DNA of 64,000 nt, taken from the NCBI RefSeq assembly GCF_041956535.1, contig NW_027192199.1, positions 458,213 through 522,212 on the forward strand, written 5' to 3'. Shown here one piece after another: positions 30,451 to 43,832 of the stretch; position 1 is the stretch's first letter, and every line of letters starts with the position of its first letter. The stretch is from Calcarisporiella thermophila CBS 279.70 (lineage: Eukaryota; Fungi; Calcarisporiellomycota). Under the pieces are notes generated by a model that made no database searches, had not been told where the DNA came from, and saw nothing but the letters and a program-made list of their open reading frames with translations. Position numbers and translations under genes: made by a program.

Positions 30451-31699
30451 TTAGCCTGGTGGTAGCATAGTGGCATCCACCTCTGTCTCTTCATCACTGT
30501 AAGCATGCTCATCTTGTGGTTCATACCGGTCATGCACTGGAGTACGTGCCATTGCCATCATTCCACTGCGCGCGCATTCAAGAATACCGAAAGGCTTCAC
30601 TAGTTTTATGAAAGCATCCACACGAGAGGATTTGGCACATAGTTCTATTATCACGCAATCGGACGAGACATCGACAATGCGACCGTGGAAAAGGCGTGCG
30701 AGTTCAGTTAGTGCATGGAGATGAGATGAGACCTTTCGAAGGACATCGCTTGGGGCTTGCTCAGCCAATTCCTCGTGCCAAGTGGGATGCTTAAGAGTTA
30801 AAGTGTCAGTGAGCTGTGATCAATGGGTTTGAGTATGTTTATTTACCTCTTCCTTATGTTTTTGCCCGTCGACCTCCTCCTCAGAGAACAGGTGTCCATC
30901 AATCTGCTCTTGCAAGTGCTCAGGTCCAAGGACTGATACCTTGATTAGCAACAGCTCTCTTTCCACAAGCTTGGTTCGGCTGTAGTCCATGACTGCCCAA
31001 ACCGGGACCTACTCAGAGCAAAACAATTTTAGAGTTTTCAGGACTTATTTACAAAAGGAGATACTCACAAGATCTTCTAACTGTTTCCTTGCTTGCTCCA
31101 CTACACCTCCTTGTCCCTTAAGCACAATCGTCATTCTTCCCAAATCTTGTACATCGGTTTTGGATCCCACCATACTATCGATATTGAACCCGCGCCCCGC
31201 CAAAATTCCTGAGACTCGGGCAATCACACCCGATTCGTTATGCACCAAGCAATTTAACACATGTCGTGACTCCGGCTCGGTCGCGGTTGGAGTATTGTAG
31301 AGAATGTTCGTTACAGCTTCTTCAGCAGAAGGAGTTCGGCTCCATGCAGTTAAATGTGGAGCACGTTTTTGGCGTGCACGTCGTCGATTATAGAAAATGG
31401 TTTCGAGGGGTGCTCCCCTGGGTACATCCGATTTAGTTGTGGAGGGATTTTGCGTGTTTGAAGAATTGTCATGAGAACTGGATGAATGCGTAGAGTAAGA
31501 GGCAAGAAGAGGAGTGATAGGTGAGCGTCCGGGATACTGATTCGATATGGGCGCAATATCCTTATATCTGCTCTATTGTGATAGAAAAGAGTAGCAAAAA
31601 AGAAACTTAGGGATTAGCACTCAAATCCCACTAAACAATTGAATAACCTACCAACCCGACCAGCCTCCTTGGGAGGGACGAGCGCAGCGGGAACACCAT
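30451..31699 (-). CDS. ILV6: Acetolactate synthase small (regulatory) subunit
   Basis: AEEAVTNILYNTP, HVLNCLVHNESGVIARVSGILAGRGFNIDS, RMTIVL, VEQARKQLEDLVPVWAV, ERELLLIKVS, PFGILECARSGMMAM, C-terminal LPPG. Confidence 0.95.
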
Positions 31700-32771: not shown

Positions 32772-35700
32772 ATGGTTTCATCAACTACCCGCACTGCCAA
32801 TATTGTAGTTTTGCCTGGTGATGGTGTCGGTCCTGAGGTGACTACCGAGGCCATTAAAGTGCTAAAATTGATCGCAGAACGAAGAGGGCAGAACCTCGGG
32901 CTAGACTTTCAGTTCGTTGAGGATAAAATTGGAGGTTGTGCGATTGATGCACATGGTATGTATACCACCTACTTAACAAAAATTTTGCCTTTATCTTACC
33001 TGCTCTTTCTACTCCTATTTAGGCTCCCCACTCTCAGATGTAACCCTTGAAAAATGCAAGCAGGCGGATGCCATCCTCCTAGGTGCTGTCGGTGGCCCAC
33101 AATGGCCGCGTCCTATCGATCCCTCGGATCCTTCTAAAGGTCTAACTCCGCGGCCTGAAGAAGGGCTCCTTAAGCTCCGAAAAGCTCTCGATCTCTACGC
33201 AAATCTTCGTCCAGTTTCTTTCGCAAGTGATGCTCTCCTACGTCTGTCACCCCTCAAGGAAAATGTGGTACAAGGCACAGAATTCGTCTTCGTCAGAGAG
33301 CTGGTAGGAGGAATATACTTTGGACAGCGCAAAGAAGGTGATGCAGATGGAAAAGCTTTTGATACACTCCCATACTCAACCGAGGAGATCCAGAGAGTCA
33401 CTCGACTCGCAGCATACTTGGCTCGAAAGCAAAGTCCTCCTGCAACCATTCATTCAGTAGATAAGGCCAATGTTTTGGCCACTTCAAGACTCTGGCGCAA
33501 AATAGTGACCGAAACCTTGCAGAGAGAATTTCCGGACGTGCCATTTGATCATATTCTCGTGGATGCTGCAGCAATGCACATGATTTCAAATCCTAAGAAG
33601 CTAAACGGCGTAGTGCTTACGGAGAATATGTTTGGAGATATCTTGAGCGACGAGGCGAGCGTCATCCCTGGAAGCTTGGGACTACTTCCGTCAGCTTCAC
33701 TAAGTGGTCTACCCACTGGCCGCGGCCCATGTGTCGGATTGTATGAACCAATCCATGGGTCTGCACCCGATATCGCTGGCAAGGGAATTGCGAATCCTAT
33801 CGGAACCATTCTTTCTGCCGCTCTGCTGCTTCGATATTCTCTTGGTCTCGAAGCAGAGGCAAAGGCTATAGAAGATGCCGTTCGTAAAGTGCTTGATGAT
33901 ACTGACTTTGGAGGGTATGGAATTCGCACAAAAGATTTGGGGGGAGAGGCAACAACGCAAGCGGTTGGTGACAAAATAGTCGAGGTACTGGACGCAATTC
34001 TTGAAGGGATCAATGCTGCTGAGCGAACAGGCACGCTAGTAAAGCGGCCTTTGCTAATGACTCGCCCCCCTGGCCGGCGCCCCATGACCCTATGTGAGAA
34101 AATTATTACGCATTCTGCAATCGGATTGCCGACGCCTGGACACGTCTCACCTGGTGACATGGTATGCGTGAAAGTGGACTGGACGTTGGCATCAGAACTG
34201 ACCTGGAAAGGTATGGAGAAGACTTACGATGAGATGAAACGTCCCGGCGTGTATCGTAATGACCGCTTTTGGCTCGCAATTGATCATACCGTGGATCCCC
34301 GAATCAACGACCAACCCAAGCCAAGAGAGTTGATCGCCGCGTCAGAGAGCTTTGCGAAGGAAGCAAAACTGCTTGATTTCCATCGTCCGAACTACTCGAT
34401 TTTGCACACTGAGTTCTACCGAGAACGAGCTCAGCCTGGTCAGATGATTATTGGAGCTGATTCACACAGCTGCTCGGCAGGTGGACTGGGTAATTTCGCT
34501 GTGGGTTTGGGTGCCGCTGATGTTGTGATGCCTCTTGTTACTGGCGAAACTTGGTTTAAAGTACCAGAAACAGTTGAGGTGAAGTTCGTCAACGCACCAC
34601 CATTTGGAATCGGAGGAAAAGACGTCATCCTTTATGTCCTCGGAGAGCTTAAACGCAACACTGTTGCATTTGAGCGAGCAGTAGAATATACAGGGCCTGG
34701 GCTCCGATACCTAAGCTGTGATGCACGCTTTGCAATTGCAAACATGACGACCGAATTTGGTGGAATTGCCGGAGTAGTCGAACCAGATGAACAGACTGCC
34801 GCGTTCATCGCAAAACGTAAAAACCCTGCTCACAAAAATTCTGCTCTGTATTTCAAAGCCGATCCCGATGCCCAATATGCCGAGTCACACGTAATAGATC
34901 TGTCGAAAGTGGACTCGCTAGTAGCCATTTACCCTTCGCCTGACAACGTTGTTCATGTGGATGAGGTTGCTGGAAAGATGAAGCTCGACGGTGTCTTTAT
35001 TGGCGCGTGTACTACTGCGGAAGAAGATCTAATTCTCGCAGCACTTGTTCTCGAACAGGGATTGAAACGTGGTATGGTGCCTTCCATCCACGGCAAACGC
35101 AAGGTCACCCCTGGCTCCGTTCCAATCATCGCTAAACTCCGTCGTCTCAATCTGCTTCAGATCTACGAGGCGGCTGGTTTCGAGATAGGTGCTCCTGGCT
35201 GCTCTTACTGCATTGCAGTGGCAGCAGACAAAGCTGATGAGGGTGAAGTTTGGCTATCGAGCCAGAACCGTAATTTCAAGAACCGGATGGGTAAGGGGGC
35301 AATTGGCAACCTTGCATCTGCAGCCACCGTTGCAGCGTCATCCTTTGAGATGAACGTGCGTAACCCCCGTGACTTGCTTGATGCCATTGATCGTAAGCGA
35401 TACGAGGAGATGCTCGAGATTTGGCTCGACAAGGCCGAGCCGGTGGTTTACTCTGAACCTAACCCTGTTCTTTCAAATCCGGCTGATTCGTCGCATGGCT
35501 CTGAAGTTGCAAACACAGTGGCTGCTGCCGCAGCCGATGAGGGCAGCAACTATCTTCCTGATGTGGTTTCGGGTAAAGTGCAGCTCTTTGGTGACCACAT
35601 CGACACCGATGCTATCATTCCTGCACCTTTCATGCCCGGGAAGGATGACGAGGACCTAGGGACTCACTGTTTCGAATTTTTCCGCCCAGAATTCCGGGAG

Positions 35701-36228
35701 AAGGTGAAGCAAGGCTTCGATATCGTAGTTGCAGGTGTTGGTAAGTGAAGAAAGATTTATTGATATATCCTTTGGTGTGTTAATGTACTAATTTAAAATT
35801 CTATTTTAGGATTTGGCTCTGGTTCCTCTCGTGAGGAAGCACCTCGTGCTCTCCGTGGTATCGGCTGTAAGGCAGTAATTGCTAGGTCATATGCTTACAT
35901 CTATGGTCGCAATCAGCCAAACATGGCTCTTCTTGGTATCACCGTCACCGATGACGAGTTTTATAAGCTTGCTCAGGAGGGCTCCTCGGTCACGATTAAT
36001 GTGCCGAAGCGCACCGTCTCAGTTGAAGGGCGCGAATTTCCCTTCCACCTCTCTCACATGGAGGAGCAGCTGATCCGTGGCGGCGGTGTAACGGCTATGT
36101 TCAAGAAGTATGGAAACAAGTTGTTCAGAGTTGCAACTGCTGGCGCGGCGGCCTCTGCGGGCGGAGGTGCGGGATGTGCAACCGCATGCGAAACGGGAGC
36201 AGAAGAGCAGAAGACGCTTGGCTGGTAA
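32772..36228 (+). CDS. LEU2: Fusion: 3-isopropylmalate dehydrogenase (Leu2/LeuB) + aconitase-family dehydratase large domain (LeuC2/HacA-like) + small swivel domain (LeuD-like), ~1106 aa
   Basis: Exons 32772-32955, 33023-35740 and 35810-36228 (3321 nt). IPMDH motifs: [56 protein letters not shown]. Aconitase motifs: [36 protein letters not shown]. Swivel motifs: [24 protein letters not shown]. Confidence 0.93.
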
Positions 36229-40586: not shown

Positions 40587-42907
40587 CTGCTGAAAGGCTC
40601 TGATAAAAAAGTAGATAGGGAAAAACACGCGTAAAGAGATAAAAGGGAAGGGAGATAGTGTGAGACCAGAACAGTGGGATAGAAAGAAGAAAAAGGCAGG
40701 ATGGGAGCTGGTTTACCGATAAATAGGCGAAATTTTAGAGTAGATAAGAATCCGGACCGATCCTATTGGCCGATAGCGATAGGTGAGGAGGGGTCATGTG
40801 CTATCCTGTTGGAGATTCACATGCTTCGAAGGAATTGTAGCCTACCTTATCTCTACCCTAATAAGGCAAGATGGACAACACAACTTGCCCTGACGCTATT
40901 GGATGCAATGTGACTCGCATCTCTCTAACTGATGCAACAGATTATCATTCCGCCCGCATCTGTCTTCTTTCTTGGTGTAGACCACGCAGTCCCATCTCCC
41001 CTGCCATATTGCAAGCTAGATTGCGTGCAGCGTGCCTTTCTTGCTTCTATAGTAAATGGCTCTGACAATTGCACTGCAATGTTTAAACCTGGACTTGAAT
41101 GTCTTGGCGAGGAGAAATAATGTCACAGGTGTAGGGATTAGAGGCAGATGCTCGAGAAAATGAGAAGAAATAAACTCAGACTACAAAGTGGTAGCATCAG
41201 CGGAGAATGTAATGGCCTATTCTATGTAGATGGGTCGAATCTAGTCAAAGAAGTAATAGATCTTGGCTCCAGCTTTATTATGTATGAGATACTGCATGTT
41301 TACATGGAATTAACTTCAGTCAGGATGCCGCTATTTACGCGAGAGTAATAAAAAAACTTACTCGAAATTAGGCCAAGGCGGACAGATCCAAAAGGATATC
41401 GAAGTAAGAGATAAAAAGGATTAATAGCCTTTATGCAGATTTCAGCTGCATCATGATGCATTTGTTGTTTATCAAGGATTAAGTTTTTTTTATAGATTAG
41501 GTTCCCTAATAGTTAGAGTCCAGTAAAAACTGCTTAGAAAACTTTAGCTTCAGGTTAGATTTGTAAAGAATGCAAGCCGTTTTCCCTTGTCAATCATGGG
41601 TTTCCTATCAATATAGCTTCATTTATACAAATAATCCTATTAATTTAATGACTTGCATATAATTATTACTATGGGCAACTGTGTGGGTTATTTTTTCTGC
41701 CTCAAAAGATAAATCTTGACAGATCTCTTTAGCAATAATGTAGAATGGCTTCTTTCCTCACCTGAGACACGTATTCCAACGTCCACTTGGCAGCTTAATC
41801 TGGAAGGAATGAATGTAGAGATTATGACTACGTCATAATCGCCCAGCTAATGCTTGACAGTATTCTATACCCCATTAGTTTCCTAGTTAGGTGAAGGTAA
41901 CCTATTTTAGTAGACACTATAATTGTTAATAAATAATTACTAAATTTCTATTTTATTGAATCCTTGACGTGAGACAGTAATAAGGGCAAGATATCCACTA
42001 TAGCCGTGTTGAAATAAGGTGTTTTCTCATACATTATATCTCTTAACCTTTCCCATTGATTAAAGGGTAACTGAGTTGTAATCATTTAAACCGTCTAATC
42101 GAACCGTTGTCCTTGTCAAGCAAAACCGTGTCTGTAATAACCGTTTCTCATCAAGTTCGTCTTCGAAAACGTTACTATCTCTTTGACGAGTTTTTGAACA
42201 AATTTGATAGGCCATCCGCAGGATTTCCAATTCTCCTGTACTGTTTCGTGGTGAAATATTACGGTAAGAGGAAGATACTTCGTCTAAACTTCTTCTTGCT
42301 GGGTACCCTGAGTGTAAAAACATCCTCAGCAAGGTCGAGTGTTCATTGCCAGCTGTTCCAGATCGGTATTCACGTTTTTACTTTTCGACCCTTTCCGTCC
42401 TGGCTATCTTACGTTTTACTTTCACTACTCGTCCATCCTTGCTCTACTATCGCTCCTAACCCATCACCACTTGTATCTGTAAACTTCACATCGACGGCTC
42501 CCTTCCATCGTATTGCTCTTTAGTACCAGCTCCGCTCCGCATCCGATCAACTCTTCCTGACAGTGCTACTCATCGTAGTCTCTAGAGTTTGCGGTTCCAT
42601 TCGGTACCCTTCAAGCAGCTAATTCAGGGCGTAGATCATACACGAAGAAATAGATCCTCATTTTCCCCTGAATGCCCAATTCCCGAACGTTTAATCCATG
42701 ACGCTACCCTCCACTTTACCTTCCAAACTCCCGAGTTGCACTCTTTTGAGACTCCTCACAGAGTTTTGCCCAGGTGCCCACTTTTGACTCGTTACGTTGC
42801 TTACCAAGTTGCTGCATTCCAACAACGATCCCACAACATTGCAAGCGACTTCTTCTGACCAACTTTGGCTAGTGTTTTACTTGATTTAAAACCTCGCAGC
42901 CAACTCA

Positions 42908-43832
42908 NNNNNNNNNNNNNNNNNNNNNNNNNNNNNNNNNNNNNNNNNNNNNNNNNNNNNNNNNNNNNNNNNNNNNNNNNNNNNNNNNNNNNNNNNNNNN
43001 NNNNNNNNNNNNNNNNNNNNNNNNNNNNNNNNNNNNNNNNNNNNNNNNNNNNNNNNNNNNNNNNNNNNNNNNNNNNNNNNNNNNNNNNNNNNNNNNNNNN
43101 NNNNNNNNNNNNNNNNNNNNNNNNNNNNNNNNNNNNNNNNNNNNNNNNNNNNNNNNNNNNNNNNNNNNNNNNNNNNNNNNNNNNNNNNNNNNNNNNNNNN
43201 NNNNNNNNNNNNNNNNNNNNNNNNNNNNNNNNNNNNNNNNNNNNNNNNNNNNNNNNNNNNNNNNNNNNNNNNNNNNNNNNNNNNNNNNNNNNNNNNNNNN
43301 NNNNNNNNNNNNNNNNNNNNNNNNNNNNNNNNNNNNNNNNNNNNNNNNNNNNNNNNNNNNNNNNNNNNNNNNNNNNNNNNNNNNNNNNNNNNNNNNNNNN
43401 NNNNNNNNNNNNNNNNNNNNNNNNNNNNNNNNNNNNNNNNNNNNNNNNNNNNNNNNNNNNNNNNNNNNNNNNNNNNNNNNNNNNNNNNNNNNNNNNNNNN
43501 NNNNNNNNNNNNNNNNNNNNNNNNNNNNNNNNNNNNNNNNNNNNNNNNNNNNNNNNNNNNNNNNNNNNNNNNNNNNNNNNNNNNNNNNNNNNNNNNNNNN
43601 NNNNNNNNNNNNNNNNNNNNNNNNNNNNNNNNNNNNNNNNNNNNNNNNNNNNNNNNNNNNNNNNNNNNNNNNNNNNNNNNNNNNNNNNNNNNNNNNNNNN
43701 NNNNNNNNNNNNNNNNNNNNNNNNNNNNNNNNNNNNNNNNNNNNNNNNNNNNNNNNNNNNNNNNNNNNNNNNNNNNNNNNNNNNNNNNNNNNNNNNNNNN
43801 NNNNNNNNNNNNNNNNNNNNNNNNNNNNNNNN
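42908..43832. other. Assembly gap (925 N)
   Basis: Run of N. Confidence 1.

What the first reader, a model, noticed from the sequence alone, without database searches (positions are those of the whole stretch)
32772..36228. Three-domain leucine-pathway fusion: IPMDH joined to a non-canonical aconitase-family dehydratase
Seen: one reading frame runs from a complete LeuB/Leu2 (ends about 33990) through a short linker ([20 protein letters not shown]) into an aconitase large domain (from about 34080) and a LeuD-like swivel. No stop or intron lies at the junction. Known: Leu1 (isomerase) and Leu2 (dehydrogenase) catalyse consecutive steps and are separate genes in model fungi. Inference: a bifunctional isomerase-dehydrogenase that could channel 3-isopropylmalate, or a related 2-oxoacid chain-elongation module.
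Basis: partly seen in the sequence, partly recalled or inferred. Interest (0 to 1): 0.85.

Follow-up and report, generated by a model that had tools for sequence, protein, structure and literature searches.

The report
Fused leucine dehydrogenase–isomerase with unstudied isomerase
This fungus appears to do two consecutive steps of leucine synthesis with one fused protein, whose isomerase half belongs to a widespread eukaryotic enzyme family that I found no study of and that seems to stand in for the textbook Leu1 enzyme.

Summary
The fusion is real. It is a 3-exon gene (1106 aa, matching the NCBI record for Calcarisporiella thermophila), and the dehydrogenase–isomerase junction lies inside one 905-codon exon. 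It is neither rare nor an assembly error: about 100 homologues share the architecture, across early-diverging fungi, Neolecta and protist transcriptomes.

The IPMDH half passes the leuB cut-off with catalytic residues intact. The isomerase half keeps the three Fe-S cysteines and the core motifs, but forms its own mostly eukaryotic clade, 27% identical to E. coli LeuC.

Four lines favour a leucine role:
- The assembly has IPMS, no other LeuB and no canonical Leu1.
- The gene sits by ILV6 here, and in ILV2-ILV5-ILV6 clusters in Mortierella and Syncephalis.
- Rhizarian relatives also fuse IPMS.
- M. alpina, which has canonical Leu1, lacks the isomerase half at the same locus.

Activity is inferred, not shown, and channelling is untested. 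I found no paper describing the fusion, with limited coverage. Earlier scan notes cover only this same stretch.

The parts
32772..32955 (+). Exon 1: start codon and IPMDH N-terminus
   Evidence: Iso_dh profile 1-48, TIGR00169 E 2e-13; matches P0001 residues 1-61
32956..33022 (+). Intron 1 (67 nt, GT..AG)
33023..33987 (+). IPMDH (LeuB/Leu2) catalytic body in exon 2; substrate, metal and NAD-binding residues intact
   Evidence: TIGR00169 401.7 bits, cut-off 353.2; residue survey
33988..34083 (+). End of the IPMDH C-terminal helix and the in-frame linker (34024-34083); no intron, no stop
   Evidence: linker length varies among homologues
34084..35373 (+). Aconitase-family large domain of a distinct, mostly eukaryotic clade; Fe-S cysteines at about 35008, 35200 and 35209
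   Evidence: Foldseek TM 0.90-0.93 to M. jannaschii large subunits
35560..35740 (+). Start of the LeuD-like swivel, including the substrate-recognition loop FMPG (35629-35640)
   Evidence: aligned to 2pkp YLRT and 3vba YLVY; FMPG in 100 of 137 family members scored
35741..35809 (+). Intron 2 (69 nt, GT..AG)
35810..36228 (+). Exon 3: rest of the swivel with the GSSRE motif (35821-35835), flexible tail, C-terminal LGW and stop
   Evidence: Aconitase_C E 1.5e-12; LeuD models
30451..30768 (-). Neighbour ILV6 (acetolactate synthase small subunit), last exon; divergent from the fusion, and a neighbour in several relatives
   Evidence: TIGR00119 above cut-off; synteny

Best explanation
The gene encodes one cytosolic polypeptide that carries out steps 2 and 3 of leucine synthesis. 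The C-terminal [4Fe-4S] aconitase-family module (large domain plus swivel) isomerises 2-isopropylmalate to 3-isopropylmalate via isopropylmaleate. The N-terminal NAD-dependent IPMDH oxidatively decarboxylates 3-isopropylmalate towards ketoisocaproate. The isomerase comes from a distinct eukaryote-wide family, nearer archaeal/Firmicute-type LeuC/HacA than canonical Leu1, and does the Leu1 job where canonical Leu1 is absent. The fusion looks old; lineages that have canonical Leu1 appear to have lost or repurposed the isomerase half. SHOWN: gene structure, conservation, intact catalytic motifs, no canonical Leu1 or other LeuB in this assembly, synteny, IPMS triple fusions, and the missing half in M. 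alpina. INFERRED: the enzymatic activity and substrate, cytosolic location, and direction of evolution. NOT SHOWN: channelling; 1:1 co-expression is an adequate reason for the fusion.
For: (1) It is the only leuB-class gene in the genome; the other Iso_dh genes are IDH1/IDH2-type, NADP-IDH and a homoisocitrate-dehydrogenase-like gene. (2) The aconitase-family inventory is LYS4, three mitochondrial-type aconitases and this gene; leuC and leuD models and E. coli LeuC find no canonical Leu1, best E 7.5e-18 and on LYS4. An IPMS gene is present. (3) Synteny: ILV2-ILV5-(ECH)-ILV6-fusion in Mortierella sp., ILV2-ILV5-ILV6-fusion in Syncephalis, ILV6 adjacent here. (4) IPMS-IPMDH-isomerase-swivel single proteins occur in the Leptophrys vorax transcriptome and in metagenomic eukaryotes; their synthase scores best as LeuA, far above citramalate or homocitrate synthase. 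(5) At the same ILV5-ILV6-LeuB locus M. alpina has a standalone 381-aa LeuB, nested among fused Mortierellaceae (support 100), with no isomerase remnant. M. alpina has a canonical LEU1 homologue (E = 0) that leucine represses (PMC8880518). (6) The three Cys, DH, DSH, NRNF and GSSRE motifs are conserved. The specificity loop lacks the Arg of homoaconitase HacB, and this loop sets substrate preference (PMC7308503). (7) 88 of 90 full-length homologues end in W or F, like clients of cytosolic Fe-S assembly (bioRxiv 10.1101/2023.05.19.541488).
Against: No member of this isomerase clade was found biochemically characterised, and it is below every curated IPMI cut-off. It has family-wide changes near the active site: SEL where IPMIs have HEV or HD, and CTTAE where they have CTNSR or CTNGR. 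Close paralogues in Pezizomycotina coexist with canonical Leu1 (own knowledge) and sit in clusters with a PEP-mutase/isocitrate-lyase-family gene, so the family can do other chemistry. Absence of Leu1 rests on one draft assembly with gaps. I could not survey canonical Leu1 across the other fusion-bearing fungi (one search failed). The M. alpina locus and the paper come from different strains.
Confidence: 0.8

Rival explanations
1. The IPMDH half is the leucine enzyme, but the fused hydratase mainly handles smaller or different alkyl-maleates (citraconate/citramalate, maleate, 2,3-dimethylmaleate), feeding methylmalate or D-malate to the dehydrogenase. The 2-IPM isomerase step is then done by an unassembled Leu1 or by a side activity.
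For: Altered active-site motifs. The closest solved relatives include the dual isopropylmalate/citramalate isomerase. Pezizomycotina paralogues cluster with a PEP-mutase/ICL-family gene and an MFS transporter in two loci. Standalone family members occur in oomycetes and Scheffersomyces.
Against: There is no other IPMI candidate in the genome although IPMS and IPMDH are present. The triple fusions carry LeuA, not CimA. The isomerase half is missing in M. alpina, where canonical Leu1 exists. A side activity on small substrates is compatible with the best explanation.
Confidence: 0.14
2. The isomerase half is a homoaconitase-like enzyme for lysine or other tricarboxylate chain elongation.
For: Scores to hacA_fam (264 bits) are similar to those for IPMI_arch (267 bits); the top Foldseek hit is the M. 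jannaschii homoaconitase large subunit.
Against: Separate LYS4, an ACO2-like aconitase and a homocitrate synthase are present. The specificity loop lacks the HacB Arg. The partners are LeuB and LeuA. The conserved C-terminal W points to the cytosol, whereas these lysine steps are mitochondrial in fungi (own knowledge).
Confidence: 0.03
3. The fusion is an assembly or annotation artefact, or is spliced into two products.
Against: The junction lies within an open exon. About 100 independent genomes and several transcriptomes have the same architecture at 50-79% identity. Codon composition is continuous. The AlphaFold model is confident across the junction (pTM 0.87).
Confidence: 0.02

Closest known systems
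Fungal Leu2 / bacterial LeuB (3-isopropylmalate dehydrogenase, TIGR00169)
   Same: Above the curated cut-off; catalytic, metal and NAD-binding residues present; 66-77% identical to standalone Leu2 of Basidiobolus, Umbelopsis and Mucorales.
   Different: Carries a C-terminal isomerase of about 720 aa.
Fungal Leu1 / proteobacterial LeuC-LeuD isopropylmalate isomerase
   Same: Same fold family and large-then-swivel order in one chain, a C-terminal Trp tail, and the same inferred reaction.
   Different: Only 27% identical to E. coli LeuC; separate clade; 149 bits against a 560 cut-off for TIGR00170; different first active-site motif and specificity loop.
Archaeal-type IPMI/citramalate isomerase MJ0499-MJ1277 and homoaconitase MJ1003-MJ1271
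   Same: Closest solved structures (E about 1e-55; TM 0.90-0.93; about 31% identity).
   Different: Those are two-subunit prokaryotic enzymes. This one is below the IPMI_arch and hacA_fam cut-offs, has loop FMPG against YLVY or YLRT, and is fused to IPMDH.
Arabidopsis IPMI-IPMDH protein complexes (PMC7876033)
   Same: Physical association of the same two activities, proposed there to channel substrate.
   Different: Non-covalent, in plastids, and made of separate subunits; here the link is covalent.
Mortierella alpina LeuB1 (PMC8880518)
   Same: Apparent orthologue of the IPMDH half, in the same ILV5-ILV6-LeuB cluster.
   Different: Standalone 381 aa in the assembly examined; the isomerase half is absent and the species has canonical Leu1.

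Membership tests
LeuB/Leu2 IPMDH (TIGR00169) | Score above the equivalog cut-off | tested here: met
   401.7 against 353.2 bits on exon 2 alone
LeuB/Leu2 IPMDH (TIGR00169) | Substrate Arg triad, catalytic Tyr and Lys, metal-binding Asp residues, specificity-loop Glu, and the NAD-binding HGSAPD motif (residue roles from own knowledge of the T. thermophilus enzyme) | tested here: met
   E45, R52, R62, R91, Y98, K147, D180, D205, D209, E241, H244 in exon-2 numbering; conserved in non-Pezizomycotina homologues
LeuB/Leu2 IPMDH (TIGR00169) | NAD-dependent oxidative decarboxylation of 3-IPM | not testable with these tools
   Needs an assay
Aconitase superfamily [4Fe-4S] hydro-lyase | Three cluster Cys, DH, DSH, NRNF, swivel GSSRE, and the fold | tested here: met
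Canonical Leu1/LeuC (TIGR00170, TIGR00171) | Cut-off score, HEVTSP motif, grouping with proteobacterial LeuC | tested here: not met
   149 against 560 bits; SELTW motif; separate clade with support 99
Archaeal-type IPMI / hacA family (TIGR02086, TIGR01343, TIGR02083) | Cut-off score and grouping with prokaryotic members | tested here: not met
   267/410, 264/386 and 234/611 bits; long separate branch
Homoaconitase (Lys4 / HacAB) | TIGR00139 cut-off; Arg in the swivel specificity loop | tested here: not met
   177 against 530 bits; FMPG against YLRT; true LYS4 elsewhere in the genome
Isopropylmalate isomerase by function (EC 4.2.1.33) | 2-IPM to 3-IPM activity; leu1 complementation | not testable with these tools
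   Indirect genomic evidence only
CIA client with TCR signal | C-terminal [LIM]-[DES]-[WF] | tested here: inconclusive
   Ends in LGW, which does not match at the middle position. 88 of 90 homologues end in W or F, 27 match strictly, 43 end in LAW. The terminal aromatic residue is the key determinant in the cited preprint.

The most novel reading that the evidence does not exclude
This clade is a second, so far undescribed eukaryotic isopropylmalate isomerase family. It was the original leucine isomerase of fungi and many protists, fused to IPMDH and in some rhizarians also to IPMS, giving a one-chain leucine-elongation enzyme. Canonical Leu1 displaced it several times. After that the domain was deleted (M. 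alpina, and by inference other lineages with standalone Leu2) or repurposed, as in the Pezizomycotina paralogues whose dehydrogenase has lost its NAD site and which sit beside a lyase-family gene.
Probability: 0.5. Interest if true: 0.75.

Novelty: new variant of a known kind. Interest (0 to 1): 0.6.

Why it matters
If the reading holds, it identifies the missing leucine isomerase step in fungi that lack Leu1. That is shown here for one genome and is plausible for mycorrhizal fungi, Zoopagomycota, gut chytrids and several protists. These proteins are mostly annotated only as dehydrogenases or hypothetical proteins, so metabolic models may miss the step. It would revise the view that fungal leucine synthesis uses separate Leu1 and Leu2. 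It also offers natural two- and three-enzyme fusions for testing the open question of IPMI-IPMDH channelling, raised for plant complexes in PMC7876033, and for engineering 2-oxoacid chain elongation. The chemistry itself is known, so this is a new architecture and enzyme clade rather than a new kind of system.

Tried and rejected
- The joined spliced protein was not built or searched. Record P0001 came back as a hit; I used it to check each exon separately, and it is one of the 90 sequences in the C-terminus count.
- The roughly 907-aa two-domain hits were suspected to be bacterial. The two checked are exon-truncated calls on fungal-looking metagenome contigs.
- An alignment meant to pull out fungal Leu1 proteins and map their co-occurrence returned the fusion family instead. 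Co-occurrence is therefore known only for this genome and M. alpina.
- The GTDB scan found only relatives at 28-35% identity. A few nearer bacterial members exist (Schekmanbacteria, 51%), but that one has no leu genes beside it. No donor is claimed.
- Synteny with ILV genes is not universal: it is absent in Geosiphon, Synchytrium and Neolecta. In this genome the KARI and TPP-enzyme matches lie on other contigs.
- Ten literature searches found no description of the fusion. Leonard and Richards 2012 (fungal gene fusions) and Tang 2021 were not held, so prior mention cannot be excluded.
- The idea that HtyD/AMT8-type homologation aconitases belong to this clade is from memory and could not be tested.
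- Both trees are quick SH-aLRT trees, drawn with a midpoint root.

Full report
OBSERVATION. The sequence gives three exons: 32772-32955, 33023-35740 and 35810-36228, separated by GT-AG introns of 67 and 69 nt. Each exon translation, searched separately by reference, is found verbatim in the NCBI record VTP21DRAFT_11565 of Calcarisporiella thermophila, 1106 aa. The joined model was not built or searched. Exon 2 is an open frame of 905 codons containing Iso_dh, the linker, the Aconitase domain and the start of the swivel; exon 3 holds Aconitase_C. The junction has no stop and no strong splice donor. An AlphaFold model of exon 2 is confident throughout (pLDDT 90, pTM 0.87). It matches IPMDH structures and the M. 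jannaschii large subunits (TM 0.90-0.93).

DISTRIBUTION. About 100 of the best 120 hits share the architecture. They come from Glomeromycotina, Endogonales, most Mortierellaceae, Zoopagomycota, Synchytrium, Piromyces, Blastocladiomycota, Neolecta and Pezizomycotina. Protist records include Physarum, Salpingoeca urceolata, Amoeboradix and Petalomonas; several are transcriptomes, so the fusion exists as mRNA in relatives. The isomerase also occurs alone, in oomycetes, Vitrella, Syssomonas, Scheffersomyces and a few bacteria. In a quick tree the isomerase forms one long-branched clade (support 99), apart from canonical LeuC, Lys4 and prokaryotic LeuC/HacA. Most prokaryotic relatives are only 28-36% identical. 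Standalone Leu2 proteins (Mucorales, Umbelopsis, Basidiobolus, M. alpina, many chytrids, Basidiomycota) are interleaved with fused ones. The tree needs 7 changes, of which 3 are forced by strongly supported branches. This fits an old fusion with repeated loss of the isomerase half, but the direction is inferred. Some 830-860 aa ascomycete members keep a vestigial IPMDH tail (P0126, E 2.5e-6).

ANATOMY. The IPMDH half passes the leuB cut-off and keeps the substrate, metal and NAD-site residues. The isomerase keeps the three cluster cysteines and the DH, H, DSH, E, NRNF, R and GSSRE positions. It differs, family-wide, at the first motif (SEL against HEV or HD) and after the first Cys. The swivel specificity loop is FMPG in 100 of 137 members scored, aligned with YLRT of HacB and YLVY of LeuD. 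That loop determines substrate preference in IPMI and homoaconitase (PMC7308503). The missing Arg argues for a dicarboxylate alkylmalate rather than a tricarboxylate (inference). Of 90 full-length homologues, 88 end in W or F, as clients of cytosolic Fe-S assembly such as Leu1 do (bioRxiv 10.1101/2023.05.19.541488). This protein's LGW is not a strict match to that signal.

FUNCTION. Four lines point to leucine. First, genome inventory: this is the only LeuB; the other aconitase-family genes are LYS4 and three mitochondrial-type aconitases; no canonical Leu1 is found by leuC, leuD or E. coli LeuC; and an IPMS exists. The pathway therefore has a gap that only this domain can fill. Second, context: ILV6 is the divergent neighbour here, and ILV2-ILV5-ILV6-fusion clusters occur in Mortierella sp. 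and Syncephalis, though not in Geosiphon, Synchytrium or Neolecta. Third, larger fusions: Leptophrys vorax and metagenomic eukaryotes join IPMS, IPMDH, this isomerase and the swivel in 1470-1570 aa proteins whose synthase scores best as LeuA. Fourth, a natural comparison: M. alpina has the same ILV5-ILV6-LeuB cluster, but its LeuB stops at 381 aa with no isomerase remnant, and this species has a canonical LEU1 homologue that leucine represses (PMC8880518). The best explanation, at 0.8, is a cytosolic bifunctional isopropylmalate isomerase-dehydrogenase. Channelling is possible but nothing here shows it. Non-covalent IPMI-IPMDH complexes are reported in Arabidopsis (PMC7876033).

RIVALS. The isomerase could prefer smaller alkyl-maleates (0.14). 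The family is clearly flexible. In 39 Pezizomycotina-type paralogues the dehydrogenase has lost the HGSAPD NAD-site motif while nearly all keep the substrate residues. Two such loci sit beside a PEP-mutase/isocitrate-lyase-family gene and an MFS transporter, which suggests a derived catabolic role. A homoaconitase role (0.03) and an artefact (0.02) are disfavoured.

COMPARISON AND NOVELTY. The N-terminal half is a member of LeuB. The C-terminal half is an aconitase-superfamily member that probably works like Leu1 but fails membership of canonical LeuC/Leu1, archaeal IPMI and homoaconitase by score, motif and tree. Ten literature searches found no description of the fusion or of this clade. Two relevant papers were not held, so prior mention is possible, and the architecture is plainly visible in public domain annotations. 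Earlier scan notes concern only this same stretch.

VERDICT. Real, conserved and apparently uncharacterised; a new variant of a known kind. Interest 0.6.

Noticed in passing
P0295 (Leptophrys vorax); P0127 at L038:5710-10389; P0291, P0293, P0296: Single-chain IPMS-IPMDH-isomerase-swivel proteins of 1470-1570 aa: the whole leucine elongation cycle in one polypeptide, with the IPMS lacking its regulatory domain.
   Followed up: partly
L022:3823-10721; L207:8244-13399: Pezizomycotina paralogues with a degenerate NAD site in the IPMDH half, clustered with a PEP-mutase/ICL-family gene, an MFS transporter and a fungal transcription factor; possibly an unknown alkylmaleate catabolic pathway.
   Followed up: partly
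G000:C15:637261-638570 (L026): The genome's IPMS seems to end near residue 385, and no LeuA_dimer regulatory domain was found in the assembly; it may be a short IPMS without leucine feedback.
   Followed up: partly
L032:678-13433; L035:2971-13454; L209:1468-7236: A branched-chain amino acid gene cluster (ILV2-ILV5-ILV6-LEU2) conserved between Mortierellomycotina and Zoopagomycota.
   Followed up: partly
window:36454-37102 (-): A COQ4 gene lies immediately downstream, convergent with the fusion.
   Followed up: no
window:39202-39468 (+): An exon with the BING4CT domain (UTP7-like).
   Followed up: no
window:62173-63815 (-): Fragments of a non-LTR retroelement-like sequence (zf-RVT, below cut-off).
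   Followed up: no
window:about 42900-43830: An assembly gap (run of N), a reminder that gene absence in this assembly is not absolute.
   Followed up: no
P0287-P0289: Apparently bacterial LeuB joined to canonical LeuC (780-836 aa); either independent fusions or gene-calling artefacts.
   Followed up: no
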